Shown one piece after another: positions 30,064-58,528 of a DNA stretch of 64,000 nucleotides. Origin of the DNA: Diadema antillarum (Eukaryota); the NCBI RefSeq assembly GCF_040938485.1, contig NW_027270993.1:248001-312000 (forward strand), read 5' to 3'. The position numbers and the translations under genes are program-made. Within the stretch, counting starts at the first letter, position 1. Every line of letters starts with the position of its first letter. The notes below the pieces were generated by a model. That model worked only from the letters and a program-made list of their open reading frames with translations, made no database searches and was not told the DNA's origin.

Positions 30064-33000
30064 AATTTTATGGTGTTTAGTAATACAATCACTTGTTTAC
30101 CTGGCTCAATTTCAATCACAGGAGTAAACTTACAACAGACAAATTCAGTTAAATTTCTTGGTCTTTTAATTGATTGTAAATTATCTTGGCAGGATCAAAC
30201 AAATCATTTATGTAAGTTATTATCAAGAAATTTGGGTGTTATACAGAAGCTTAAGCATGTTTTCCCCACATATATATTACGTACCTTATATTCGACTTTG
30301 TTATTGCCGTATCTTCATTATAGCATACTGGCCTGGGGGAATTGTTCCAAAATACGCCTGGAGTCTATCTTTAGAATACAAAAGCGAGCTGTAAGGATTA
30401 TCAAATGTACCAATTATTTAGCACCGACAAGCCCTCTGTTCAAAAGTAATAACCTCTTAAAGATTTTTGATATATATTCTTACTCCCTTGGGATATTTAT
30501 GTACCAGTTAACTAAAGACGAATTACCTTATGCTTTCACTCCCATGTTTGTAAAAAATAAAGTTATACATTCCTACCCTACAAGACAGGAAAATTCATTT
30601 CACTTTTCTCCCGTGAGAACTGCATTTGCTCTTAAAACAATAGTACATACAGGTCCAACATTCTGGAATAGCCTTGACTCCGACATTATTGAATCGTTGT
30701 CATTGAACTGTTTTAAACGTAAATTAAAAAAATCCCTTGTGCAGGCTTATATCTAATAATACAACATGCAATTTTATTTGAACTCCCTCTTCTTTATCAG
30801 ATTCGTTGTTTATCATATGTATTCCATGGTTGCCTTTTTTTTTTTTTACTGAGTCATGTATGTCAAGGCTATTCCTGAATTAATGAATCATTATGTATCA
30901 TGTGCGTTTTTGCGCATTCTTACAGTTACGTAACTGTGTTGCTCGGGTGACAAGGAGTCTTGTTAACGCGTTACAGGTGGCTACTTTGTATTTCGCTATG
31001 CTTTCGTATATTCTATTCCTTTCCTTTGCTCTTTTTGCTCTCTTTTCTTTTACGTTAGTGGAGCGGCATAGCCGAAAAATTGTGCATTTTGTGATAAAAG
31101 CACCAAATTTCGTACACAGGCTGACAATCACGTTCAGATCAAATTTAGATATTGGGCCATCGTAAATAGCGCCCTCAACGTCCGTGGCAGCCATTTTTCA
31201 AAATGGCTGCCATAAATGCCATGTTTTCGTAAAATTTACTAATTTTAGGAGAGAAAAGTCAATAAGATTTTGGTTACAAATGGGAAATTACATTCAAAAT
31301 AAATCTACATATCGGGCCATCGGAAATAGCGCCCTCAACGGCAGTGGCAGCCATTTTTCAAAATGGCCGCCATAAATGCCATTTCTTCAAAATATTTGCT
31401 AACTTCAGAAGGGAAAGCCAGTAAGATTTTGCGAACAAGTGGGAAATTACATTCAAAATGAATCTAAATATTTGGTCATTGTGAATTGCGCCCTCAACGT
31501 CCATGACAGCCATTTTTTCAAAATGGACAGCCATTTTTTCAAAATGGCTGTGCCACTTCTTCGATGATTTTGCAAATTTCAGAAGGGAAAAGTTAATAAA
31601 TTTTTCCCATAAATTTTAATTTCATTCAAAATGAATCTAGATATTAGGCCATCGGAAATTGCGCCCTCAACGGCCATGGTCGCCTTTTTTTTCAAAATGG
31701 CTGCCACAAATGCCATTTTTTGTTAAAAAATGCAAATATCAGAAGGGAAAGCCAATGGTCTTTTTTTTTGTAAACAAGCTGGAAATTACATCCAAAATAA
31801 ATCCAGATATTGGGCAATTGAAAATTGCGCTGTCAATGGCTATGGCAGCCATCTTTTTTTCAAATGGGCATCATAAGTGCCATTTTTTCATTAAAAAAAT
31901 GCTAATTTCAAAAGGAAAAGTCAATGAAATTTTGGTTATAAATGGGAAATGAGATTTAAAATAAATATCGATATTGGGCCATCGGAAATTGTGCCCTCAA
32001 CGGTCATGACAGCCATTTTTCAAAATGGCCTCCATAATGCTATATTTTCGAAAAGATTTACTGAAATCAGAAGGGAAAGCCAACGAGATTTTGCAAACAG
32101 GTGGGAAAGTACATTCAAAAGTAAACTTATTGGGCCATTGCAAATTGCCCCCTCAATGGCCATTCCAGCCCATTTTCAAAATGGCCACCATGAATGTCTT
32201 TTTTTTTTTCCACAAAGGTGGAAAATTACATTCAGACTGAATTTGATAATAGGCCATCCAAAAGTGCACCCTCAACAGCCATAGCAGCCAAGTTTTAAAA
32301 CAGCTGCCATGGATGCCCCCCTTGTTTTGCTTTGTTTTTTGCAAAAATTTGCTGATGTCAGAAGGAAAAGTCAATAAGACTTTGCAAACAAGTTTAAAAT
32401 TATGCTCAAAAAATAAATTTAAATGTAAAGTCGTCTTAGAAGGCGCCCTCAAGGGCCATGCCGACCGCCATGGATGTCTGCTTCTTTCTTTTTTCTTTTC
32501 TTTTCTGGAAAGATTTGCTAATTTCAGAGAGAAAACCAAGAAATTTGTACATACCTTTATGTTTAAAATCATATTCAAAAGAAAATAATATATGAGTTCA
32601 TTACAAATGGCACCATCAACGTCCATGGCAGCCATTTTCCAAATGGCCACTATAGATGCTATTTATTTCTTGAAAATATGATAATGCCACAAGAAGACAA
32701 TATAATTTCTTGTGAATATTGATAAAAGACATTCAAATAAATTCAAGTTTCAATTTGAATTTAAATTTGAAATGAAGATATTGAGCCACCACTTAAACAT
32801 CGTCCCAACGGCTATGGCAGCTCTTTGGCAAAATGGCTTCCACACACTCCTTATTCTTATTTGCTTATCGCCTTATTCCAGAAGGAGAAAGCAATAGAAT
32901 ACTGCTAAACAGCCATTATATCTAATGCAATCTGGTGTTCAAAGAAATTTAAATTTTAAAAAAGGTTTCATTGATGGGTTAGTTCGAAATTCATGTTTTC

Positions 33001-35202
33001 AGTTTAGTCCTAATTGCAGTATTTCGTGTGTGACGGCTAACAGTATGGATATCAAAGGTATGTGTTTTATGGAAACATAGCAAGTAGATTAACTTTTATC
33101 GTAAAATGAAAGGCCATTTTTTCGTATCTGTTTTAAGAATATTTAGGAAGTTACATTTTAGAATAGATACACGTCATATATCCCATATATTCAATGATAT
33201 GGTGTTACTGTCAAAGTTAACACATGGCGCCATTATCCCTGGATATTCATATTACTCTTTTTCGGAAATCTTATGTTTGCCACCTAAAACATGCATTCAT
33301 CATTGGTAAGATATAATTGCTAAGCATTTGCCTTGTTTATTTCAAATGTTCCTCAAATGATTTCCGTAACACCATATTTCAGATTATATAATGTCTCTGT
33401 GAGTATTCTACTGTCCTCTCCTTCTGAAGTTAAAGCAAATTTTCAAGACAAAAAAAAAAGAAGAAGAGTGTATTGTAGCCATTTTGACCAATAGCTGAAA
33501 TAGCCATTGAGAACACAGTTTATGAATATGGCCCAATGTCTAAACTTCTTTATATGTATTGTCAACTTGCGACAAAAAAAAAAATGTTTACTGTCTTCTT
33601 CCGGCATTAGGACATCTTCATTAAAGAAAAATGGCATCTATGACAGCCATTTTGGAAAATGGCTGCAATTACCGTTATAAGCATTTTTTTCTTCTTGAAA
33701 ATTTGCGAAGGAACAATTTCTAGAGTTAATGCAATCTAGATATATTGTTTGATTTTAAACATGATTTTCAATTTATGTACACATTGACTTTTCTTTCTGA
33801 AATTACCATTTTTTAAAACAAAATGATTATGGCAATGGCAGCAATTTTGGCATATGGCGGCCATGGCCGTTGAGGGCAGTATTATAATAATCTAATACAA
33901 ATATTTATTTCAAACATAATTTTCAAATTGTGTGCAAAATCTTATTGACTTTTCCTTTTGTGAAATCAGGAAATAAAAGAAAATGGAATCCATGGTGGCC
34001 ATTTTGAAAAAGGCTGCAATGGCCATAGAGGGCGCTATTTACAATAATGTAATACATAGGCGCAAGAAATATTTCAAACGAAATTTTTAAATTGAGTGCA
34101 AGATCTCACTGTCTTTTCCTTCTGGAATTAGTAAATTCGGAGAAAAAGGTGGCATTTATGGCAGCCAATTTTAAACATGGCTGCCATTGGCGCTGAGGGC
34201 GCAATTTGCGATGGCCCAACATCTAAATATATTTTGAATTTTATTTCAACTCGTTTGCAAAATCTTGTTGATTTTCCCTTCTGAAATGTTTAAATTTTTT
34301 GCGAAAAATTGCGTTTATGGCGACCATTTATGAAAAAATGGCTGCCATGACCGTTAGGGGGCGCAATTTGCGATGGCCCAATATCTGAACTTGTTTTTTA
34401 TGCTATGTCCGACACGTTTGCAAAATCTTATTGATTTTCCCTTCTGAAATTTGTAAATTTTTACTATAAAATGGCATTTAAGGCGGCCATTTTGAAAAAT
34501 GGCTGCTATGGCCGTTGAGGGCGCTATTTTCGATGGCCCAATATCTAAATTTATTTTAAATATTATTTTCCACTTTTTCGCAAAATCTTACTGATTTTCC
34601 CTTCTGAACTTTGTAATTTTTTGCGAAAAATGGCATTTATGGCGGCCATTTTGAAAAATGGCTGCCATTACCGTTGAGGGCGTAATTTACGGTGGCCCAA
34701 TGTCTAAATTTATTTTGAATGTTATTTCCCACTCGTTTGCAAAATCTTATTGATTTTCCCTTCTGAAATTTGTAAATTTTAACGAAAAATGGCATTTATG
34801 GCGGCCATTTTAAAAAATGGCTGCCATGGCCGTTGAGGGCGCTATTTTCGATGGCCCAATATCTGAATTTATTTCTAATGTAATTGTCAACATGTGTGCG
34901 AAATTTGGTGCTTTTATCAAGAAATGCACAATTCCTCTAATTTTTCAAGCTATGCCGCTCCACTACGTCCCTTTCCTTCCTTTCATAGTTTTCGTTTCTA
35001 GGTTGTTTAAGAAGACCAACACTTTCATATATACAGGGACCTATACATTACAAGCTTTGCTTTTTAGTAGGTCCCCACATTTCATGTTTGTTAAATTGTC
35101 TTCTCTTGTATTTTTTGTAATTTACGACGCTATGTTCAATTTTATGTTCAATCGATCGTATCATGTTTGATGTTTTGAAATGTGGAACAATAAAATCAAA
35201 TC
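30064..35202 (+). mobile_element. 5'-truncated L2/CR1-group LINE whose 3' UTR is interrupted by the Academ-like element
   Basis: ORF 30070-30756 (KFLGLLIDCKLSW, LYSTLLLPYLHYSILAWGN, IQKRAVRII, FWNSL). The 3' UTR resumes after 34968 with stem-loop GGGACCTA/TAGGTCCC, AATAAA at 35189 and an ATCAAATC tail. Confidence 0.85.
31056..34965. mobile_element. Non-autonomous Academ-like foldback DNA transposon with tandem-repeat arms
   Basis: Perfect 17-bp termini TAGTGGAGCGGCATAGC/GCTATGCCGCTCCACTA; 3-bp TSD CGT (31053-55, 34966-68). Left arm has ~11 and right arm ~8-9 inverted ~160-bp units around a ~500-bp spacer. TAG..CTA with a 3-bp TSD fits Academ. Confidence 0.8.
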
Positions 35203-35824: not shown

Positions 35825-38800
35825 ATGGCCGTGTCGGGAGTGTCGATTTTAGCGGTCTATGCAGCGGCTCTCATCGCTTCATCAGCTAGCTTGTTCACGG
35901 ACCGTCCCGCGGTCGACATGTGGCTATCTAGGGACGAAGTGTCTCGAATTCTTGGTGCGTATAGATTATAATATTTTTGCTCTCTGTTGTGAATAATTTC
36001 ATTTCAGAAGACAGAAGGTCATCATTTTTATGATATCTTGGAATGTAATACCATGAAATTGCTCTGCTTTGCCCTGATGAACATCACCAGCAAAGTACGG
36101 TGATGCCTGGGAAAAATTACCATTGTTTGGGTTTTTCCAGAGGTATTATTGTACATGTGAATTACAACGTAGGCCTACGTGTATTTTTGCTTTTGATGTG
36201 AACTTGCAACCAGGGTAATCTTTCTCGTCAGACTCCATTCCAGGAAAAGAAAGAAAAGAAAGAATACCAGCATGGCATTCTTTCCTATTCTATTCGAGCA
36301 ACCGAGCAGAACCTCAATGTTTTTAAAGTGCAAACTTTATGAGGTACAGTTACTTTATAATAAGCCATCACCAAGCAACACATTGTTATCACCATGCAGA
36401 GCCCATTAGAAACCTTTTGTACTGAAGCTATAGAGGGGTCGACAGGTGAGATGAATGATTAAAGCAATTTCCGCATTTTCGATAGTATTTTCCTGTTGTA
36501 TTGGATCTATTTCAACACACCGTAATTATTCGTCTGCATTTCGATCAGCCTGGAAAATGCATGGATCACATAATGCATATATCGGGCACCAAAAAAAAAA
36601 AAAAAAAATGTACATTATGCATTAAAACCAAACATTAAGCAAGTTAAGTTTCAATCGTAAAACAGCAAACCTAGCTCAGACCCTCGCAGTTCTACAAACA
36701 ATACAGAAAAAAAAATACCTAAAAGACAAAAAAGTTCAGGTGTGAGTTTCTTTAATTTGTCTCCCTCTACAAATGAAATTTGTTAAGATCGACAGGTTCG
36801 AGTCCCACTGGTACCTTTTCCCGACATTTTTGTTAATTTACAGATCAGCAGTTGCGATTTTAACAAATGTTATTTGTAGAGGGAGACAAATTGAAGAAAC
36901 TCACACCTGAACCTTCACCCCACTGAATAATATCTTGCTGACAAAAAAAACACACAAACAAACCTTAGATAATATACAATTATCAGTAGGCCTAATAACC
37001 ATGCACAACTTTAGAATTCCCTTGCGAAATTTGTCCTCTTATATAATTCTTCAATTAAATTAATCGCGTGTGTTTGGTTATAATTCAGAGGTTTCTATCA
37101 CAGGGCTAAGCCCGCAAGTTTTGACTGACTTTCATCAAGACTCGTTTTGAGAAATTATTATGTATGGTTATTTATTGCGCGGAGAATAACACTGTAATGG
37201 ATGCATGTTATCTAATTTGTACACGACAAGAAAGTTAACATCCTGAACCTTGCAGCCTTGTTATACTTAAAGGCTGAAATAATGTTCTCTTGGAAACGTG
37301 TCATCTCATTTCATGTATCGATGTAAACAGATTTTACTGTTCTCATCATTACGTTTCATTATCAACTAACATATGGCTGTGTTGATGTGTTGCGCCTTAT
37401 CTATTATCTAAAGCTCGTGTCTGGAAAGCTAAAACATAATGGTACAATGTGCACGTTCCTAAGCACATGACACCCTTCTTCAATCCTACAGCATCAAACG
37501 AATATTTCATGGCGTCAAAATAACGTGCATCTCAAATTTGACCTCAAGACTATTGTTCTGTGTTTGGCAGTGAGAAATGTAAATATTTTGAAACTTCTTT
37601 TTACTTGTTGAGTGCATGGGGTATCTCCGATTACACATTCCATATGCATGCACTACAAACGATTGATGTGACAGATTAGGCCCTACTGGGTAACTCCTCC
37701 GTGACATATTGATTGTTAATTGTTTACCGTATAGGAGTTGACTATTTCATGCTACGATGAACATATTTTCTGCCCAAGCTCCAAGGACGCTGTGGATGTG
37801 GTGACTTTGATAGCCACTTCCTGTTGAGGCCGCAACTCGTCCCAACAAAGCGAATAATATTCGTTGTGAAATACGATGTGAAATTGTGGGAAAACACTGT
37901 GTCAATTATGAAACCCTCATCTTTTATTTTTTCCTCAGATGGAATTAGAAATCATGCCACTCCTGTTGACTGTTAGACGAGAAAACTTAGTGGTATTGCT
38001 ATTGATTACCATCTAATCATTGAGGTATTATCATTGCGTTGTTTGGGGGTATGCGAACCTCGGGAATGAATTAAAGTCAGTTTGTGTATACTCCTCAAGA
38101 TCGAGGAAATAGCTATACTGTCTTCTTCACTGACAATCTCTTGAGATGATTAGTTGGTGACCTGGAGATAATCTAAGTGGGGATTAACAAGCTGTCTAGT
38201 CAAATCAATTATTCCACTCTCCACCAACTATAGTATTAAGCTCATCACCTTTGCATGGGATATAAAAGCACCACTCCGCGCGCACTGATCTTTTTCAACG
38301 CGGCGCCCCCCACGCCTGCGATCCCGTCTTGTCTCGGCGGGTTATGTTTTGTCTGCCTCGCTTGGAGGCATGGCTCAGAGGAAAACAACATAAGAATTCG
38401 AGCTACCATACTCAATTCAGTGAAAAGGAGAAGTGATTATACCTCGATGCAGGCTGCGGGCTCGGTGCCGCCTGTGGTTAACGACATAAAAATGTTCAAT
38501 CTGCCCTCATAATGAACGGAACCTTTAATCCAATCTTCGCAGACTTCATTAGCGGCGCTCTAGTGTCTGCGACAATTAAGTCAAGGCTGCTTGAGAGGTT
38601 AATGTAGCTTTGTGTGTTTAATCCATCCCGAGCCGGGAAAGCTGTCTGTGTTTAAGGGATTTATCACAATGAAGTCCTTTATCCCATTGTAAGCGGTACA
38701 CAATAGGTTTACCAATGTTTGGATACACAGGAATGTTGTCCCCAAACGCGAGGTTACACCTTACCCGGTACTTAAGTTGACTTCCTAAAAGCGACATACT

Positions 38801-49802: not shown

Positions 49803-52800
49803 ACAGACAGACAGAGAACTTATTTTCCTGTCTGGAGATATCGAGCACATCCTTTATCCTTTCTTGAGTACATGGTGGCTCTGAAAAGAGCCGTTTGTTT
49901 GTAAAATGATTGGCGCAGACCAACACTTTACTTGGAGGTGGTGTACTTGGTGACGGCCTTGGTGCCCTCAGACACGGCGTGCTTGGCCAGCTCTCCGGGG
50001 AGGAGGAGGCGGACGGCGGTCTGGACCTCACGGCTGCTGATGGTCGACTTCTTGTTGTAGTGGGCCAGGCGGGAAGCCTCACCGGCGATGCGCTCGAAGA
50101 CATCGTTGACGAAGCTGTTCATGATGGACATGGCCTTGGAGGAGATGCCAGTGTCGGGGTGGACCTGCTTCAGCACCTTGTAGATGTAGATGCCGTAGCT
50201 CTCCTTTCGCCTCCTGCGCCTCTTTCCGGCAGAGGCAGCGCGTGCCTTGGCCTTACCGGCCTTCTTGGCTCCCTTTCCGCTAGTCTTGGCAGGCATGGTG
50301 TTGGTTACTAGTCGTGATGATTAGATCAACTGAAGAGACTTGGCGATTCTGACCGCTATTTATGGAGGCGCCGAGGATCCCCTGACAAAAATTCACACCT
50401 CATTGAACTAGAGCGCTATTCAAAGTTGAAGGCGGGAATGACGGCCGTATGCAAATGACGGCCGTATGCAAATTACGGTTTATCCTGCACACAAAATGGA
50501 TCGATATTCGATTGGCGGCCTTGTTTACTCTGACGTCACATGCCCTTCTGCTAATGACTGGGTTCATGGCGCGGGTTGGTGTTAGGAAGAACTGTTCCAA
50601 ATGATATTCATGCATATCCCTAAAAGAGCAACCCTGAAAATTGGACTCCTTTCATGCGGTGGTATGTTGTAGAGGGAGAGAATTCAGACCTTTACTCAGA
50701 ATACCAAAATTGGAAACTTCGTTATGATGGCTGGGGAATGATTACTATGGATTTCCATTTGATTTATTCGAACCCCGAAAAAATTCAAACTGTTATTCTT
50801 GATACAAAAGTCGAGGGTATTCTCCAGTGACATAGGGTGAGTTTTTTTTTTAATTTGTTACTGTAAATTTTCATACACGTTGTTGGACGACATTTTCCAT
50901 GCAGAAGGGATATACAACCTTTATATCAGGAGTCAAATCGCGGATATCAATTAAAAAAAAAATGTTGATTTACAGAGTGCAGGGAGAGGCGAGTAGGCCT
51001 ATTTGTACGTCTTGACATTACGATTAGTGTACATCACTTTCACAGAATAGAATACAAATGCGCAACAAATAGAGAGGGGAAAGCTCAAACTAATACACCG
51101 CATCGGAAACAATTTAGGCACAATAAAGTAATCTTTTAACCCATAAACCTGGCACTGACCTAGCTGTCGCGAGCTAGGTTGACTCAGACATTAGTACTGG
51201 TATATCACTCATGGGACTATCAATAGACTAAGGAATAATTGACCGCTCCGATGATACTATTTACACTAGACAGCGACATGTGTGAAACGTAATGCAAAGA
51301 AAATATACAGAAATCATAAGAAGAAAAATCAAAGAGAAGGTGATGATGGAGATAAACAAGGAGGAAAACACGGGGGAAAAAAGAGGTGATGGTGTATAGA
51401 TAAAGAAGAGCACCCTGTTGGTTCTTGTTCTGAAGAAAAAGCAACCAGAAAATTCGAGAACCTCTTAACCGCCAAGAGGCATGCATGACACAGTGTGTGG
51501 ATATAACTGTTAACACTTCTGTTTGATGTCCACACGAACAAACCTTTAGCGCTCGTATGTAAATAAGATTACAGAGCTTCATCACACTTGGCTGACTTTG
51601 AACCCACAAGAGTGCATCTTCAACGGAGACTCAACCTTATTGGTCCTCCCGAGGTTACGCTTCTAGATTCATTGATCGGAAAGGCAGCTACTCCGATCGT
51701 AAAAAGCCGTATAAAAGGCCTGGCGCTCAATTCAAAGTGCACTTTGGAAGGAATTACACGAAGGAATTACAAGACAAAAGTGCTGAAGCCGCAAACACAA
51801 ATACCTTCCCCCCAAGCACGAACGATGGACTGGCCAATTTTGTAGCATTTCTCGTCAAAACATTACAAACTATCGTCTCTGGAAAAAATGACATGATACT
51901 TGATGTGATAATCCAGGCCAGTAAACTATTCCTGAATTGCCAACTGAACAAAAGTCAGTTGATAGAGCTACTGGATAAAGGGGCCAACCCCATAACATAA
52001 TGGCTCAAAACCACATGTAGGTTTCAATATCCTACAATGGAATGCACAAGGATTAAAAAGTCACGGAAATGAATTTGAAAAAATGTTATTTGATTTAAGA
52101 CAAAAGCCTTCAATTATATGTGTTCAAGAAACCTGGTTCTCAAACGACAAAGAGATGAACATTATGAGTTTTAAATGCTACCCTAAGAACAGGGAAAAGG
52201 GACAAAGGGGGGGAATTGCAATTTACGTTGAAGAAAATATCTTAGTAACAACCTATGAAACCATAACCTATGATGGTATAGAAACTGATATTCAAAAAAT
52301 TAAATGTATTATTAATGGAGTAAAGATATGTGTTATTAATCTGTACAACCCCTGTAAAATATTCACAAAAAAAACAATGGAATATATTGCTGCCAACATT
52401 GAGGAGAATACAATAATCTGCGGAGATTTTAATAGCCACAATGTTTTATGGGGTAGTGCTAAAACAGATAAAAACGGGAGATTAATAGAAGAATTTTTTG
52501 ACAAGGCAAATTTAGTTCTTCTTAACAATGGAGAATTTACAAGAATTGACCCCTCTTCGGGAAAGTTTTCTTGTCTCGATTTAACCCTAGCCACCCCCCA
52601 TCTGGCGTTAAAGTGCACATGGGAGGTAACAAAAAATAACTTTGGAAGTGATCATCTTATGATAAACATCCAAGTAGGAAATTATATGAAACAGGCCAAA
52701 GCAGATGAGTGCACAAGCAGAATACATCTACTTTTTAATAAAGCGAATAAAAGAGAATATGAAGCATATTCGACAAAGTATATCACTGAAAATATCCTAG

Positions 52801-55800: not shown

Positions 55801-58528
55801 AATGATAAAAGTGCCCGGTGTGTATGCCTCAAAACCAAAATCTGTTTCAGGTTGACAGCAATTTGTTTTAATTAACCACAAAAATAAAGTTATTTATGCT
55901 AATACAAAGAAATAAAATATTTGCCGGGAGCTGTTGCGCAGCAAGGACACAGAATAAAGAGCGCCATCAAACGACTTCAACCAGCAGTGACGACGTGACA
56001 CACACGAACCAGGACTCGACAAGCCAACCCATACACCCACCACCCCCAGCCTCAGCCCAGTCAGTTAGCCACTGTACAAGTACAGCTGCAAACGCACCGT
56101 ACAGAGTGGCGTAAATAGTCAAGTCTGACTGAAAAACGCCAATAAACTCAACAACAACAACAACATCAAAGTGCACTGTTCGTTCTAGTTCTCAAAGACG
56201 CAACAACAAGCAAACTAATCATGTCTGGACGTGGTAAAGGCGCTAAGTCTAAGGCTAAGGCCAAGAGCCGATCTGCCCGCGCGGGACTCCAGTTCCCCGT
56301 CGGCCGTGTGCACCGCTTCCTCCGCAAGGGCAACTTCGCCAACCGCGTCGGTGCTGGTGCCCCCGTGTACCTCGCCGCCGTCCTCGAGTACCTGACCGCC
56401 GAGATCCTCGAGCTCGCTGGCAACGCCGCCCGCGACAACAAGAAGAGCAGAATCATCCCCCGCCATGTGCAGCTCGCTGTCCGCAACGACGAGGAGCTGA
56501 ACAGGCTTCTTGGTGGAGTCACCATCGCCCAGGGCGGTGTCCTCCCCAACATCCAGGCTGTCCTCCTCCCCAAGAAGAAGTAAATTCTCCAAGAAGGACA
56601 AAAAGTTTACTGCCCTCAAGCAGAAAACACCCAACGGCTCTTTTCAGAGCCACCAAATCAACAAGAAAGAAATCTGGCGAAAACTCTCTCATACCATACC
56701 CTACAGTGTTTCTGAATTTGTAGATTATGTTTATATCTATGACAGAAAGAAAGTTTCATACAGACAATATGATTATGCGATACCAATTTTTAATAATGAA
56801 AGTAGTTATTCCTTAAAGAGTATACACTGGTTGACTAAATGTCAACACATGGCACTTTCCCCTCAAATTACAGATAGTCAATATGCCTCAAATCAAGTTA
56901 TTTTCTTTTGTTGTATGTGTTTTAAGGACATTGTTTCACGAATAAATCAAAGTAAGACGTAACAGAGGTGTCAATATAGTTCCCCAAAGATAATCATATT
57001 ACATTCAGTTGTAGGGCCTACCTGATATTTTGAAAAACACTGTTAGCCAACTGCAACCCTCGCACATCTATCGTTATTGCGAGTTTTCATCATAAGTATA
57101 AAGAATAGGTTAGCAATCCGCTGACAATCTTGATTGGGTAATGTTGTGTCATGTTGGTGTATACCTTGTTGAGGTATTGGTAATCTTTTTGCCAATCTTC
57201 AAACCTGAACGCTCACTCAAGTAATGACTGACCATTTCACTATACTGGATTCTATGTTGTTTTTGTTGTTGTGTTTATTTTTCTGATTTGTTTGTTTGTT
57301 TTTGCCATAAACACTGAATGTTTATGAACTGGCCCTCGTTGTTATCGTTTTAACAAGAAATTTGACTAAAAACTAGGTTACCGAGATTTTCTTGTTTGCT
57401 GTTACTGTCCATGAATAAGATCGTAATCTTTATCAGTAAATATGAACACCAAGTGACAAAGAAAACTGGTGACACTGGTTCAAATCCATTCAGGCTTGTT
57501 CCTTTTTCTCCACCGTGGTGTTCATAACAGTACAGATCGAGCATACGATCTCAGTCACGGAGAGTATAAAAACAAAAACAACAACAACAAACAAACAAAA
57601 CAAAAACAAATGATGTTATGTTCCAATATGAGAAGCTATGACAAATGAATGAATAAATAAATACATAAATAAATAAATAAATAAATAAATAAATAGATAA
57701 AGACAATAGTCTTCAAAATTACCATATAACTCAACATACCAGATTCATTCCTTGAAAATAATTAATTGACATTTTATACGGTTTAGTTTCAACTCGTAGC
57801 AACTTTGTTACACTCCGTGTCATCAGTGTTAATTTCTCCCTCCCCTGTTGTTTGTACGCTGTAGAATTTCGGATCGATTTCCCTTGTACCGGAGAGCGTA
57901 GCGGGACAACCTCGGTCAGTATCATCGTGCGCATTCAGCACGCCAAGAGCGGCAGGGACATCCCCGCTTCACCCGTCCACATAACATTCGACAAGAAGTG
58001 CATTGAAGGTATGCTATTCACTATGCCGCATTCCTGCCTATTGTAAGTTTACGTACGGCATGTGTACGGCCTGTGCCCGTCCGCCACATCAGTTGAAGCT
58101 GACCACACCCCTTTATCTGGTTATGAACTTTTATAACATCAGGTTTTCCTCACGCTTTAGTAGAAATGAATCAAAGGCAGACCATAACTTGCGCGCGGTT
58201 TTTATGCTCATTCAGTTCCAAGAGGTCTTTGAAAGCTTATGGTCCCTACTTGGTTAACATATCATACAATATCGGTCAAAAATAACGTTTAAGATTTTAA
58301 GATAAGTTTAAAACGTTCTCATACGAGAGGTATCTCGTGATGTTGTTATCCAGTAACACTTAGCAGATTGATATTCTGGGGGTTTTGTAATATTTTGCTG
58401 ACATGTTATGAATCTGAATAAGTACGTTTCGAGGCCAAGGCTAACGCTTATTAAGGCTCATAATAGAAAGAGAGAAAAAGTTTATCTTTGGTTAACTGGA
58501 TTCTTTTTTTTTCTACTGCAAACATTAC

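What the first reader, a model, noticed from the sequence alone, without database searches (positions are those of the whole stretch)
51098..55906. Near-intact RNase H-bearing LINE sits within the H2A/H2B bidirectional promoter
Seen: a 1223-aa uninterrupted ORF2 with RT FADD and all RNase H catalytic residues (D-E-D-D plus H). Removing the element (tentative TSD CTAATACA) leaves about 1.1 kb between the two ATGs, a typical divergent-pair spacing. The octamer/CCAAT/CRE cassette stays on the H2B side, now ~5.7 kb from H2A. Inference: either a young insertion uncoupling H2A from H2B regulation, or a family that preferentially targets histone-gene spacers. Site-specific non-LTR elements are known for rDNA, snRNA and spliced-leader genes; I am not aware of an I-group family targeting histone promoters.
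Basis: partly seen in the sequence, partly recalled or inferred. Interest (0 to 1): 0.72.

Follow-up and report, generated by a model that had tools for sequence, protein, structure and literature searches.

The report
LINE copy inserted at H2A start
A young, 5'-truncated copy of an ordinary, non-site-specific LINE retrotransposon has landed right at the transcription start of one dispersed histone H2A gene on one of the two haplotypes, cutting the gene off from its own TATA box. It is a chance insertion, not a histone-targeting family.

Summary
The 1223-aa ORF with endonuclease, reverse transcriptase (FADD) and RNase H (D-E-D-H-D) is real and does lie between divergent H2B and H2A genes.

Other copies, an empty counterpart site on contig C73, and public read contigs place the insertion at window 51744-56165.
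- It has a 12-bp TSD, TCAAAGTGCACT, at 51732-51743 and 56166-56177.
- It has a 13-nt filler at the 5' junction and a (CAA)n tail.
- 51098-51743 is native spacer. 55907-56165, read as H2A promoter, is LINE 3'UTR.

The copy is not near-intact. It lacks about 1.3 kb of the ~5.7-kb element, namely the 5'UTR and 344 of 424 ORF1 codons.

It sits 26 bp after the H2A TATA box and 43 bp before the ATG, in sense orientation. It differs at 10 of 4393 bases from a full-length copy and is absent from the other haplotype contig.

Eighteen other loci with flanks, and about 35 more places compared by coordinates, are at unrelated sites with unrelated 8-16-bp TSDs. None lies in the hundreds of tandem histone units. 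Targeting is refuted; this is an ordinary young, probably segregating LINE insertion.

The parts
49928..50296 (-). Histone H2B coding sequence (122 aa). Its 3' stem-loop is at 49877-49892.
   Evidence: Pfam Histone E 1e-20. Stem-loop motif located. Identical CDS on C73.
50297..51743 (.). Native H2B-H2A spacer, 1447 bp. It holds the H2B-side octamers (50449, 50466), ATTGG (50511) and CRE (50531). It also holds a ~230-bp dispersed repeat at 50628-50860.
   Evidence: Present at 93% identity on the insertion-free contig C73. Motifs located.
51710..51717 (+). H2A TATA box (TATAAAAG), now directly upstream of the LINE instead of the H2A leader.
   Evidence: Sequence read. On C73 the same TATA is contiguous with the H2A leader and ATG.
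51732..51743 (+). Left copy of the target-site duplication, TCAAAGTGCACT.
   Evidence: Only 12-mer shared by the two junction regions. It is single (TCAAAATGCACT) at the empty site on C73. The read joint 51731->56166 has 12 letters fitting both sides.
51744..51756 (+). 13-nt filler at the 5' junction (TTGGAAGGAATTA). Ten of its bases repeat the element's own GAAGGAATTA at 51760-51769.
   Evidence: Absent from the five copies that cover this part of the element and from C73. The junction is unique in the genome.
51757..56165 (+). 5'-truncated LINE copy, 4409 bp.
- ORF1 remnant up to the TAA at 51998-52000.
- ORF2 frame open 51996-55754, with its first ATG at 52083.
- 3'UTR 55755-56149, with AATAAA at 56141-56146.
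- (CAA)5CA tail at 56150-56165.
   Evidence: Colinear with L002 1501-5913 at 99.75%. Domains. Tail and flanks of 22 copies.
52083..55754 (+). ORF2 as listed from its first ATG (1223 aa): apurinic-type endonuclease, reverse transcriptase and RNase H, plus a C-terminal CX2CX11HX4C motif.
56166..56177 (+). Right copy of the target-site duplication, TCAAAGTGCACT.
56178..56220 (+). Remaining 43 bp of the H2A leader between the TSD and the ATG.
   Evidence: Contiguous with the TATA box on C73.
56221..56583 (+). Histone H2A coding sequence (120 aa). Its 3' stem-loop is at 56636-56651.
   Evidence: Pfam Histone and Histone_H2A_C. It differs at 2 of 363 nt from C73 and the protein is identical. Stem-loop located.

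Best explanation
This is one recent, chance insertion of an ordinary LINE. It belongs to the RNase H-bearing, apurinic-endonuclease 'I group' type.
- The full-length element is about 5.7 kb.
- ORF1 has three CCHC knuckles.
- ORF2 carries endonuclease, RT and RNase H.
- The 3' end has AATAAA followed by a (CAA)n tail.

Shown: the element entered at the start of a dispersed, replication-dependent H2A gene, in the same orientation as the gene. The site is 26 bp after the TATA box and 43 bp before the ATG. The copy has a 12-bp target-site duplication, lacks the first ~1.3 kb of the element (ORF1 almost wholly missing), and has a 13-nt filler at the 5' junction.

Inferred: these features are the signature of target-primed reverse transcription that stopped or switched template early. 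The insertion is probably on only one of the two haplotypes in the assembly.

Inferred consequence: this H2A allele has lost its promoter and is probably silent or strongly reduced. The H2A core promoter now points into a truncated LINE that carries only ORF2. H2B keeps its own promoter. The cost is small because the genome holds hundreds of other H2A genes. The family has no histone specificity.
For: - Boundaries come from 22 other copies that end in (CAA)n at the same point, and from 5 copies that continue upstream of 51757.
- The empty site on C73 reads TATAAAAGG...TCAAAATGCACTGTTCG...ATG without interruption.
- The whole 64-kb window is collinear with C73. Unique window DNA occurs exactly twice in an assembly that keeps allelic LINE loci apart at 99.3-99.7% identity.
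- Read contigs agree. A joint skipping exactly 4434 bases, with 12 shared letters, is seen in runs X1 and X3. An X2 contig bridges the filled 5' junction.
- The copy differs at 10 of 4393 bases from full-length copy L002.
- Both junctions are unique in the genome.
- The full-length copy L002 has ORF1 of 424 aa with CCHC knuckles, ORF2, and a 16-bp TSD.
- Other copies have 8-16-bp TSDs of unrelated sequence and no H2A or H2B in their flanks.
- None lies in the 7.07-kb tandem histone arrays.
Against: - No RNA data could be had: no listed run is on record as RNA. The H2A start site and the effect on H2A and LINE transcription are therefore inferred from TATA spacing only.
- C105 and C73 are more divergent here (85-99%) than the six or so allelic LINE pairs (99.3-99.7%). 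A recent segmental duplicate is not formally excluded as an alternative to an allele.
- The filled junction was not shown for run X1, nor the empty one for X2. Contigs show presence only.
- Copy lists are capped: 40 scored of 74-115 candidates.
- RT clade phylogeny was not done.
Confidence: 0.88

Rival explanations
1. The family preferentially targets histone-gene spacers or promoters.
For: One copy sits at a histone promoter. Histone DNA is only about 0.1% of the assembly (roughly 300 or more units of 7 kb). One hit among about 50 copies is therefore nominally more than expected, but the locus was chosen because of it.
Against: - 18 other loci with flanks hold no H2A or H2B within 1.5 kb.
- Their TSDs share no motif.
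- About 35 further places lie on other contigs, or at least 111 kb from any listed histone hit.
- The hundreds of tandem units hold none of the listed copies.
Confidence: 0.03
2. C73 is a paralogous segmental duplicate, not the allele. The insertion is then fixed in one duplicate and not polymorphic. The rest of the description is unchanged.
For: Divergence between C105 and C73 (85-99%) is much higher than between the allelic LINE-locus pairs (99.3-99.7%).
Against: - Unique window DNA and this H2A/H2B pair occur exactly twice, while other genes and LINE loci also come in twos. A duplicate in a two-haplotype assembly should give four places.
- Run X2 shows the filled junction but no empty joint. 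Run X1 shows the empty joint.
Confidence: 0.08
3. Assembly artefact: a LINE copy was wrongly joined into the histone spacer.
For: The element is a repeat, nearly identical to copies elsewhere.
Against: - A perfect 12-bp TSD flanks the insertion exactly at the empty-site position.
- The junction has a unique 13-nt filler.
- An independent read-derived contig from another study (X2) bridges the 5' junction.
Confidence: 0.01
4. The LINE 3'UTR now serves as a replacement H2A promoter, so H2A stays expressed under new control.
For: The H2A coding sequence is intact and identical in protein to the empty allele.
Against: An intact CDS is expected anyway for an insertion this young. No promoter evidence and no RNA data are available.
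Confidence: 0.05

Closest known systems
I-group non-LTR retrotransposons (clades I, Nimb, Ingi, Loa, R1, Tad1, Outcast), e.g. the Drosophila I factor
   Same: - ORF2 has apurinic-type endonuclease, RT and a C-terminal RNase H with D-E-D-H-D.
- ORF1 has CCHC knuckles.
- The 3' tail is a simple repeat rather than poly(A).
- Copies are frequently 5'-truncated and have variable TSDs.
- Kojima and Jurka 2015 (PMC4640811) list RNase H as a feature of the I group.
   Different: The clade within the group was not determined, because no reference RT set was available. The tail is (CAA)n. In the young copies, ORF2 has no in-frame ATG ahead of the conserved endonuclease N-terminus.
Site-specific APE-type LINEs (R1 and Tx1 clades: rDNA, snRNA, spliced-leader, telomere and microsatellite targets)
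   Same: Same enzymatic machinery. One copy lies in a multicopy gene family.
   Different: Copies of those families share one target sequence and position. Here every copy has a different flank and TSD, and the tandem histone arrays hold none of the listed copies.
SART1-type UAAUG stop/start coupling of ORF1 and ORF2 (from my own knowledge of Kojima, Matsumoto and Fujiwara 2005)
   Same: The ORF1 stop TAA overlaps an ATG (window 51998-52002). In the older pair L005/L006 that ATG is in frame with ORF2.
   Different: In the window copy, L002, L003 and L020, a 2-base length difference puts that ATG out of the ORF2 frame.
De novo L1/LINE insertions into promoters or 5'UTRs of genes (a known class of mutation)
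   Same: Sense-oriented, 5'-truncated insertion with a TSD that separates a gene from its promoter.
   Different: The hit gene is one member of a family with hundreds of copies, so a phenotype is unlikely.
Dispersed divergent 'late-type' H2A-H2B pairs beside tandem 'early-type' arrays, as described in sea urchins (from my own knowledge)
   Same: - Divergent pair with about 1.5 kb of spacer.
- Octamers on the H2B side.
- Both genes intronless with 3' stem-loops.
- The same genome has same-strand tandem units of 7.07 kb.

Membership tests
I-group non-LTR retrotransposon | Apurinic/apyrimidinic-type endonuclease at the ORF2 N-terminus | tested here: met
   PF14529 E 1.8e-23 and PF03372 E 9.7e-11. 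The N-terminal [10 protein letters not shown] motif lies upstream of the first ATG.
I-group non-LTR retrotransposon | Reverse transcriptase with an F/YxDD motif | tested here: met
   PF00078 E 1.4e-36. FADD at nt 54060.
I-group non-LTR retrotransposon | RNase H domain downstream of RT with D-E-D-H-D | tested here: met
   PF00075 E 2.5e-11. In the alignment to HIV-1 RNase H all five residues match.
I-group non-LTR retrotransposon | ORF1 with CCHC zinc knuckles | tested here: met
   Met in the full-length relative L002, whose 424-aa ORF1 has three CX2CX4HX4C-like motifs. The Pfam zf-CCHC hit is weak (E 0.019), so the motifs were read by eye. The window copy keeps only the last ~80 codons, without knuckles.
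I-group non-LTR retrotransposon | Placement of the RT within a named I-group clade by phylogeny | not tested
Target-primed reverse transcription insertion (any LINE) | TSD flanking the copy, 3' tail, 5' truncation, and an empty site lacking one TSD copy | tested here: met
Site-specific (target-sequence-specific) non-LTR family | Most copies inserted at the same sequence or position of one kind of target gene | tested here: not met
   18 other loci have unrelated flanks and TSDs and no histone genes. Further places compared by coordinates lie away from histone hits.
Autonomous ('near-intact') element copy | Holds the complete 5'UTR, ORF1 and ORF2 | tested here: not met
   The copy starts at position 1501 of L002, whose element starts near 186 and whose ORF1 spans 470-1744.
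Replication-dependent histone gene pair | Intronless H2A and H2B, each with a 3' stem-loop, divergently arranged | tested here: met
   (GGCTCTTTTCAGAGCC at 56636, and its reverse complement at 49877).

The most novel reading that the evidence does not exclude
The H2A core promoter, now fused to an ORF2-only LINE copy, drives S-phase expression of endonuclease/RT. That would make this locus a trans-acting source for mobilising non-autonomous elements. Alternatively, insertion at the histone start site reflects a general preference of this family for open, S-phase-active promoters rather than any sequence specificity.
Probability: 0.07. Interest if true: 0.45.

Novelty: new member of a known kind. 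Interest (0 to 1): 0.15.

Why it matters
It matters little beyond annotation. It removes a tempting but false lead, a histone-targeting LINE. It also corrects the map: the stretch directly upstream of the H2A leader (55907-56165, read as H2A promoter) is LINE 3'UTR, and the real TATA box lies 4.4 kb away.

It does show three useful things:
- This genome harbours a recently active I-group LINE family with probably segregating insertions.
- There is a natural promoter-disrupted H2A allele that could serve for allele-specific expression work.
- The youngest copies have an unexplained ORF2 start.

Tried and rejected
CTAATACA (51090 and 55899) is a chance-level 8-mer. It lies inside native spacer on one side and LINE 3'UTR on the other.
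- **Daughter copies.** I looked for copies carrying the H2A leader plus filler, or a 3' transduction into H2A. There are none; both junctions are unique.
- **RNA evidence.** No listed run is on record as RNA, so expression could not be examined.
- **Literature.** Two searches for histone-targeting non-LTR elements found nothing relevant.
- **Protein atlas.** It returned only generic 'jockey/X-element-like' clusters with the same three domains, which do not resolve the clade.
- **Other ORFs.** Pfam on other ORFs of the window found no further histone genes.
- **Restraint.** Copies were only compared.
Full report
**Observation**

The window holds a divergent histone pair. H2B is at 49928-50296 (-) and H2A at 56221-56583 (+). 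Both were recognised by Pfam, and each has a canonical 3' stem-loop.

Between them lies an ORF at 52083-55754 (+) of 1223 aa.
- It carries an apurinic-type endonuclease, RVT_1 and RNase_H.
- FADD starts at nt 54060.
- The RNase H aligns to the HIV-1 domain with D, E, D, H and D conserved.

**Boundaries**

Long copies begin at query position 660, which is window 51757. Query positions 1-646 match only one other place, on contig C73.

Re-alignment with flanks and inspection of the ends gave the following.
- All 22 inspected 3' ends run on to window 56160-56170. They end in AATAAA, about 3 nt, then a (CAA)n tail of variable length, followed by unrelated DNA.
- The five copies that reach 51757 share sequence upstream of it for about 1305 bp.

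And 51098-51743, taken for the LINE 5' part, is native spacer.

The only shared 12-mer is TCAAAGTGCACT, at 51732 and 56166.

**Empty site**

Contig C73 carries the same H2B-H2A pair without the element. There, TATAAAAGGCCTGGCGCTCAATTCAAAATGCACTGTTCG... runs straight into the H2A ATG.

Relative to C73, the window has an extra 51744-56177:
- a 13-nt filler (TTGGAAGGAATTA, which partly repeats the element's next bases);
- the LINE at 51757-56165;
- the second TSD copy.

Read-derived contigs from public runs show the same thing independently. A joint from 51731 to 56166 skips 4434 bases, with 12 letters fitting both sides, in runs X1 (organism A) and X3 (organism B). A 406-letter contig of X2 (organism A, another study) bridges the filled 5' junction, 51381-51786.

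Both junctions occur once in the 1.75-Gb assembly.

**Allele or paralogue**

The whole 64-kb window is collinear with C73:2583078-2634289, at 85-99% identity by segment. Unique window DNA, and this exact H2A/H2B pair, occur exactly twice in the assembly.

Many LINE loci also come as pairs on different contigs, at 99.3-99.7% identity including flanks. The assembly therefore seems to hold both haplotypes. I read C73 as the other haplotype and the insertion as hemizygous.

This region's higher divergence leaves a recent segmental duplicate possible, at about 8%. Either way, C73 preserves the pre-insertion state.

**What the element is**

The full-length copy L002 (contig C58) spans about 5.7 kb and has a 16-bp TSD.
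- ORF1 is 424 aa with three CCHC-type knuckles.
- ORF2 is the same 1223-aa ORF.

The window copy starts at L002 position 1501. It therefore lacks the 5'UTR and ORF1 codons 1-344, and it is not near-intact.

It differs from L002 at 10 of 4393 bases, giving 5 amino-acid differences in ORF2.

Domain order, ORF1 knuckles and the simple-repeat tail fit the RNase H-bearing I group, as listed by Kojima and Jurka 2015 (PMC4640811). The clade inside that group was not determined.

**Targeting**

- Eighteen other independent loci with 1.5-kb flanks contain no H2A or H2B.
- Eleven other independent insertions (several present as allelic pairs) gave clear TSDs of 8-16 bp, and the sequences are unrelated.
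- The genome has at least 300 candidate H2A and H2B copies. Most sit in same-strand tandem units with a 7.07-kb period, on contigs C1283, C654, C370, C1049, C1488, C1556, C52, C211 and C1150.
- None of the roughly 55 listed LINE places lies in those arrays. The nearest coincidences are 111 kb apart (C58) and about 717 kb apart (C52).
- These lists are capped, and the flanks of the later hits could not be fetched.

Even with those limits, the histone-targeting idea is not supported. Two literature searches found no histone-specific non-LTR family either.

**Mechanism and consequence**

The following is inferred unless a call is cited.

The TSD, tail, 5' truncation and junction filler are the usual marks of target-primed reverse transcription.

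The insertion point is 26 bp downstream of the last base of the H2A TATA box (51710-51717) and 43 bp upstream of the ATG. That places it at or just after the expected transcription start. The element is in the same orientation as H2A.

- Transcription from the H2A promoter should now enter the truncated LINE and meet its AATAAA at 56141.
- The H2A coding sequence is left 4.4 kb from its promoter. It is still intact: 2 of 363 nt differ from C73 and the protein is identical.
- H2B and its promoter elements are untouched.
- With hundreds of other H2A genes present, the insertion is probably nearly neutral.
- No RNA run was available to test any of this.

**Side observation**

The ORF1 stop overlaps an ATG (TAATG, 51998-52002).

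In the older allelic pair L005/L006, that ATG is in frame with the conserved endonuclease N-terminus. The window copy, L002, L003 and L020 are two bases longer at 52016-52017, and there the ATG is out of frame. The first in-frame ATG (52083) then lies after the [10 protein letters not shown] motif.

Four independent young insertions share this state. I could not resolve how their ORF2 is made, or whether they were mobilised in trans. I only compared copies.

**Verdict**

This is an ordinary, young LINE insertion, probably still segregating, with corrected coordinates. It disrupts one dispersed H2A gene at its start site. It is a new member of a known kind and of low interest.

Noticed in passing
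window 51996-52085; L005 and L006 at the equivalent place: The ORF1 stop overlaps an ATG (TAATG). In the window copy, L002, L003 and L020, this ATG is out of frame with ORF2. The conserved endonuclease N-terminus then precedes the first in-frame ATG. The older pair L005/L006 is two bases shorter, and there the ATG is in frame.
   Followed up: partly
window 30067-35198: A 5.1-kb stretch present in the window but absent from the collinear contig C73. It is probably another insertion/deletion polymorphism or a transposable element. ORFs inside it had no Pfam match.
   Followed up: no
window 50628-50860: A ~230-bp dispersed repeat inside the native H2B-H2A spacer. It has about 600 candidate copies in the genome at 75-78% identity and is present on both haplotype contigs.
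   Followed up: no
window 36730-36950: A short repeat of about 150-200 bp with more than 2000 candidate places. It also occurs as tandem arrays of ~300-bp period on contig C109:751400-754600.
   Followed up: no
G000 contigs C1283, C654, C370, C1049, C1488, C1556, C52, C211, C1150: Hundreds of tandem histone units with a 7.07-kb period and H2B and H2A on the same strand. Some spacings are irregular (10-22 kb), which could hide insertions or missed copies. The layout resembles sea urchin early histone arrays, but that is my inference.
   Followed up: no
window 56166-58535 versus C73: Identity to C73 drops to about 85% just downstream of the insertion, against 92-98% upstream. The H2A CDS itself differs at only 2 of 363 nt.
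   Followed up: partly
L012 and L013 (C182:672568-673984 and C182:2027511-2028927): The same LINE insertion, with the same flanks, occurs twice on one contig 1.35 Mb apart at 98.6-99.7% identity. This is either a segmental duplication or a haplotype duplication within the contig.
   Followed up: no
window 59591-60007: An ORF with a teneurin-type EGF domain lies downstream of H2A.
   Followed up: no
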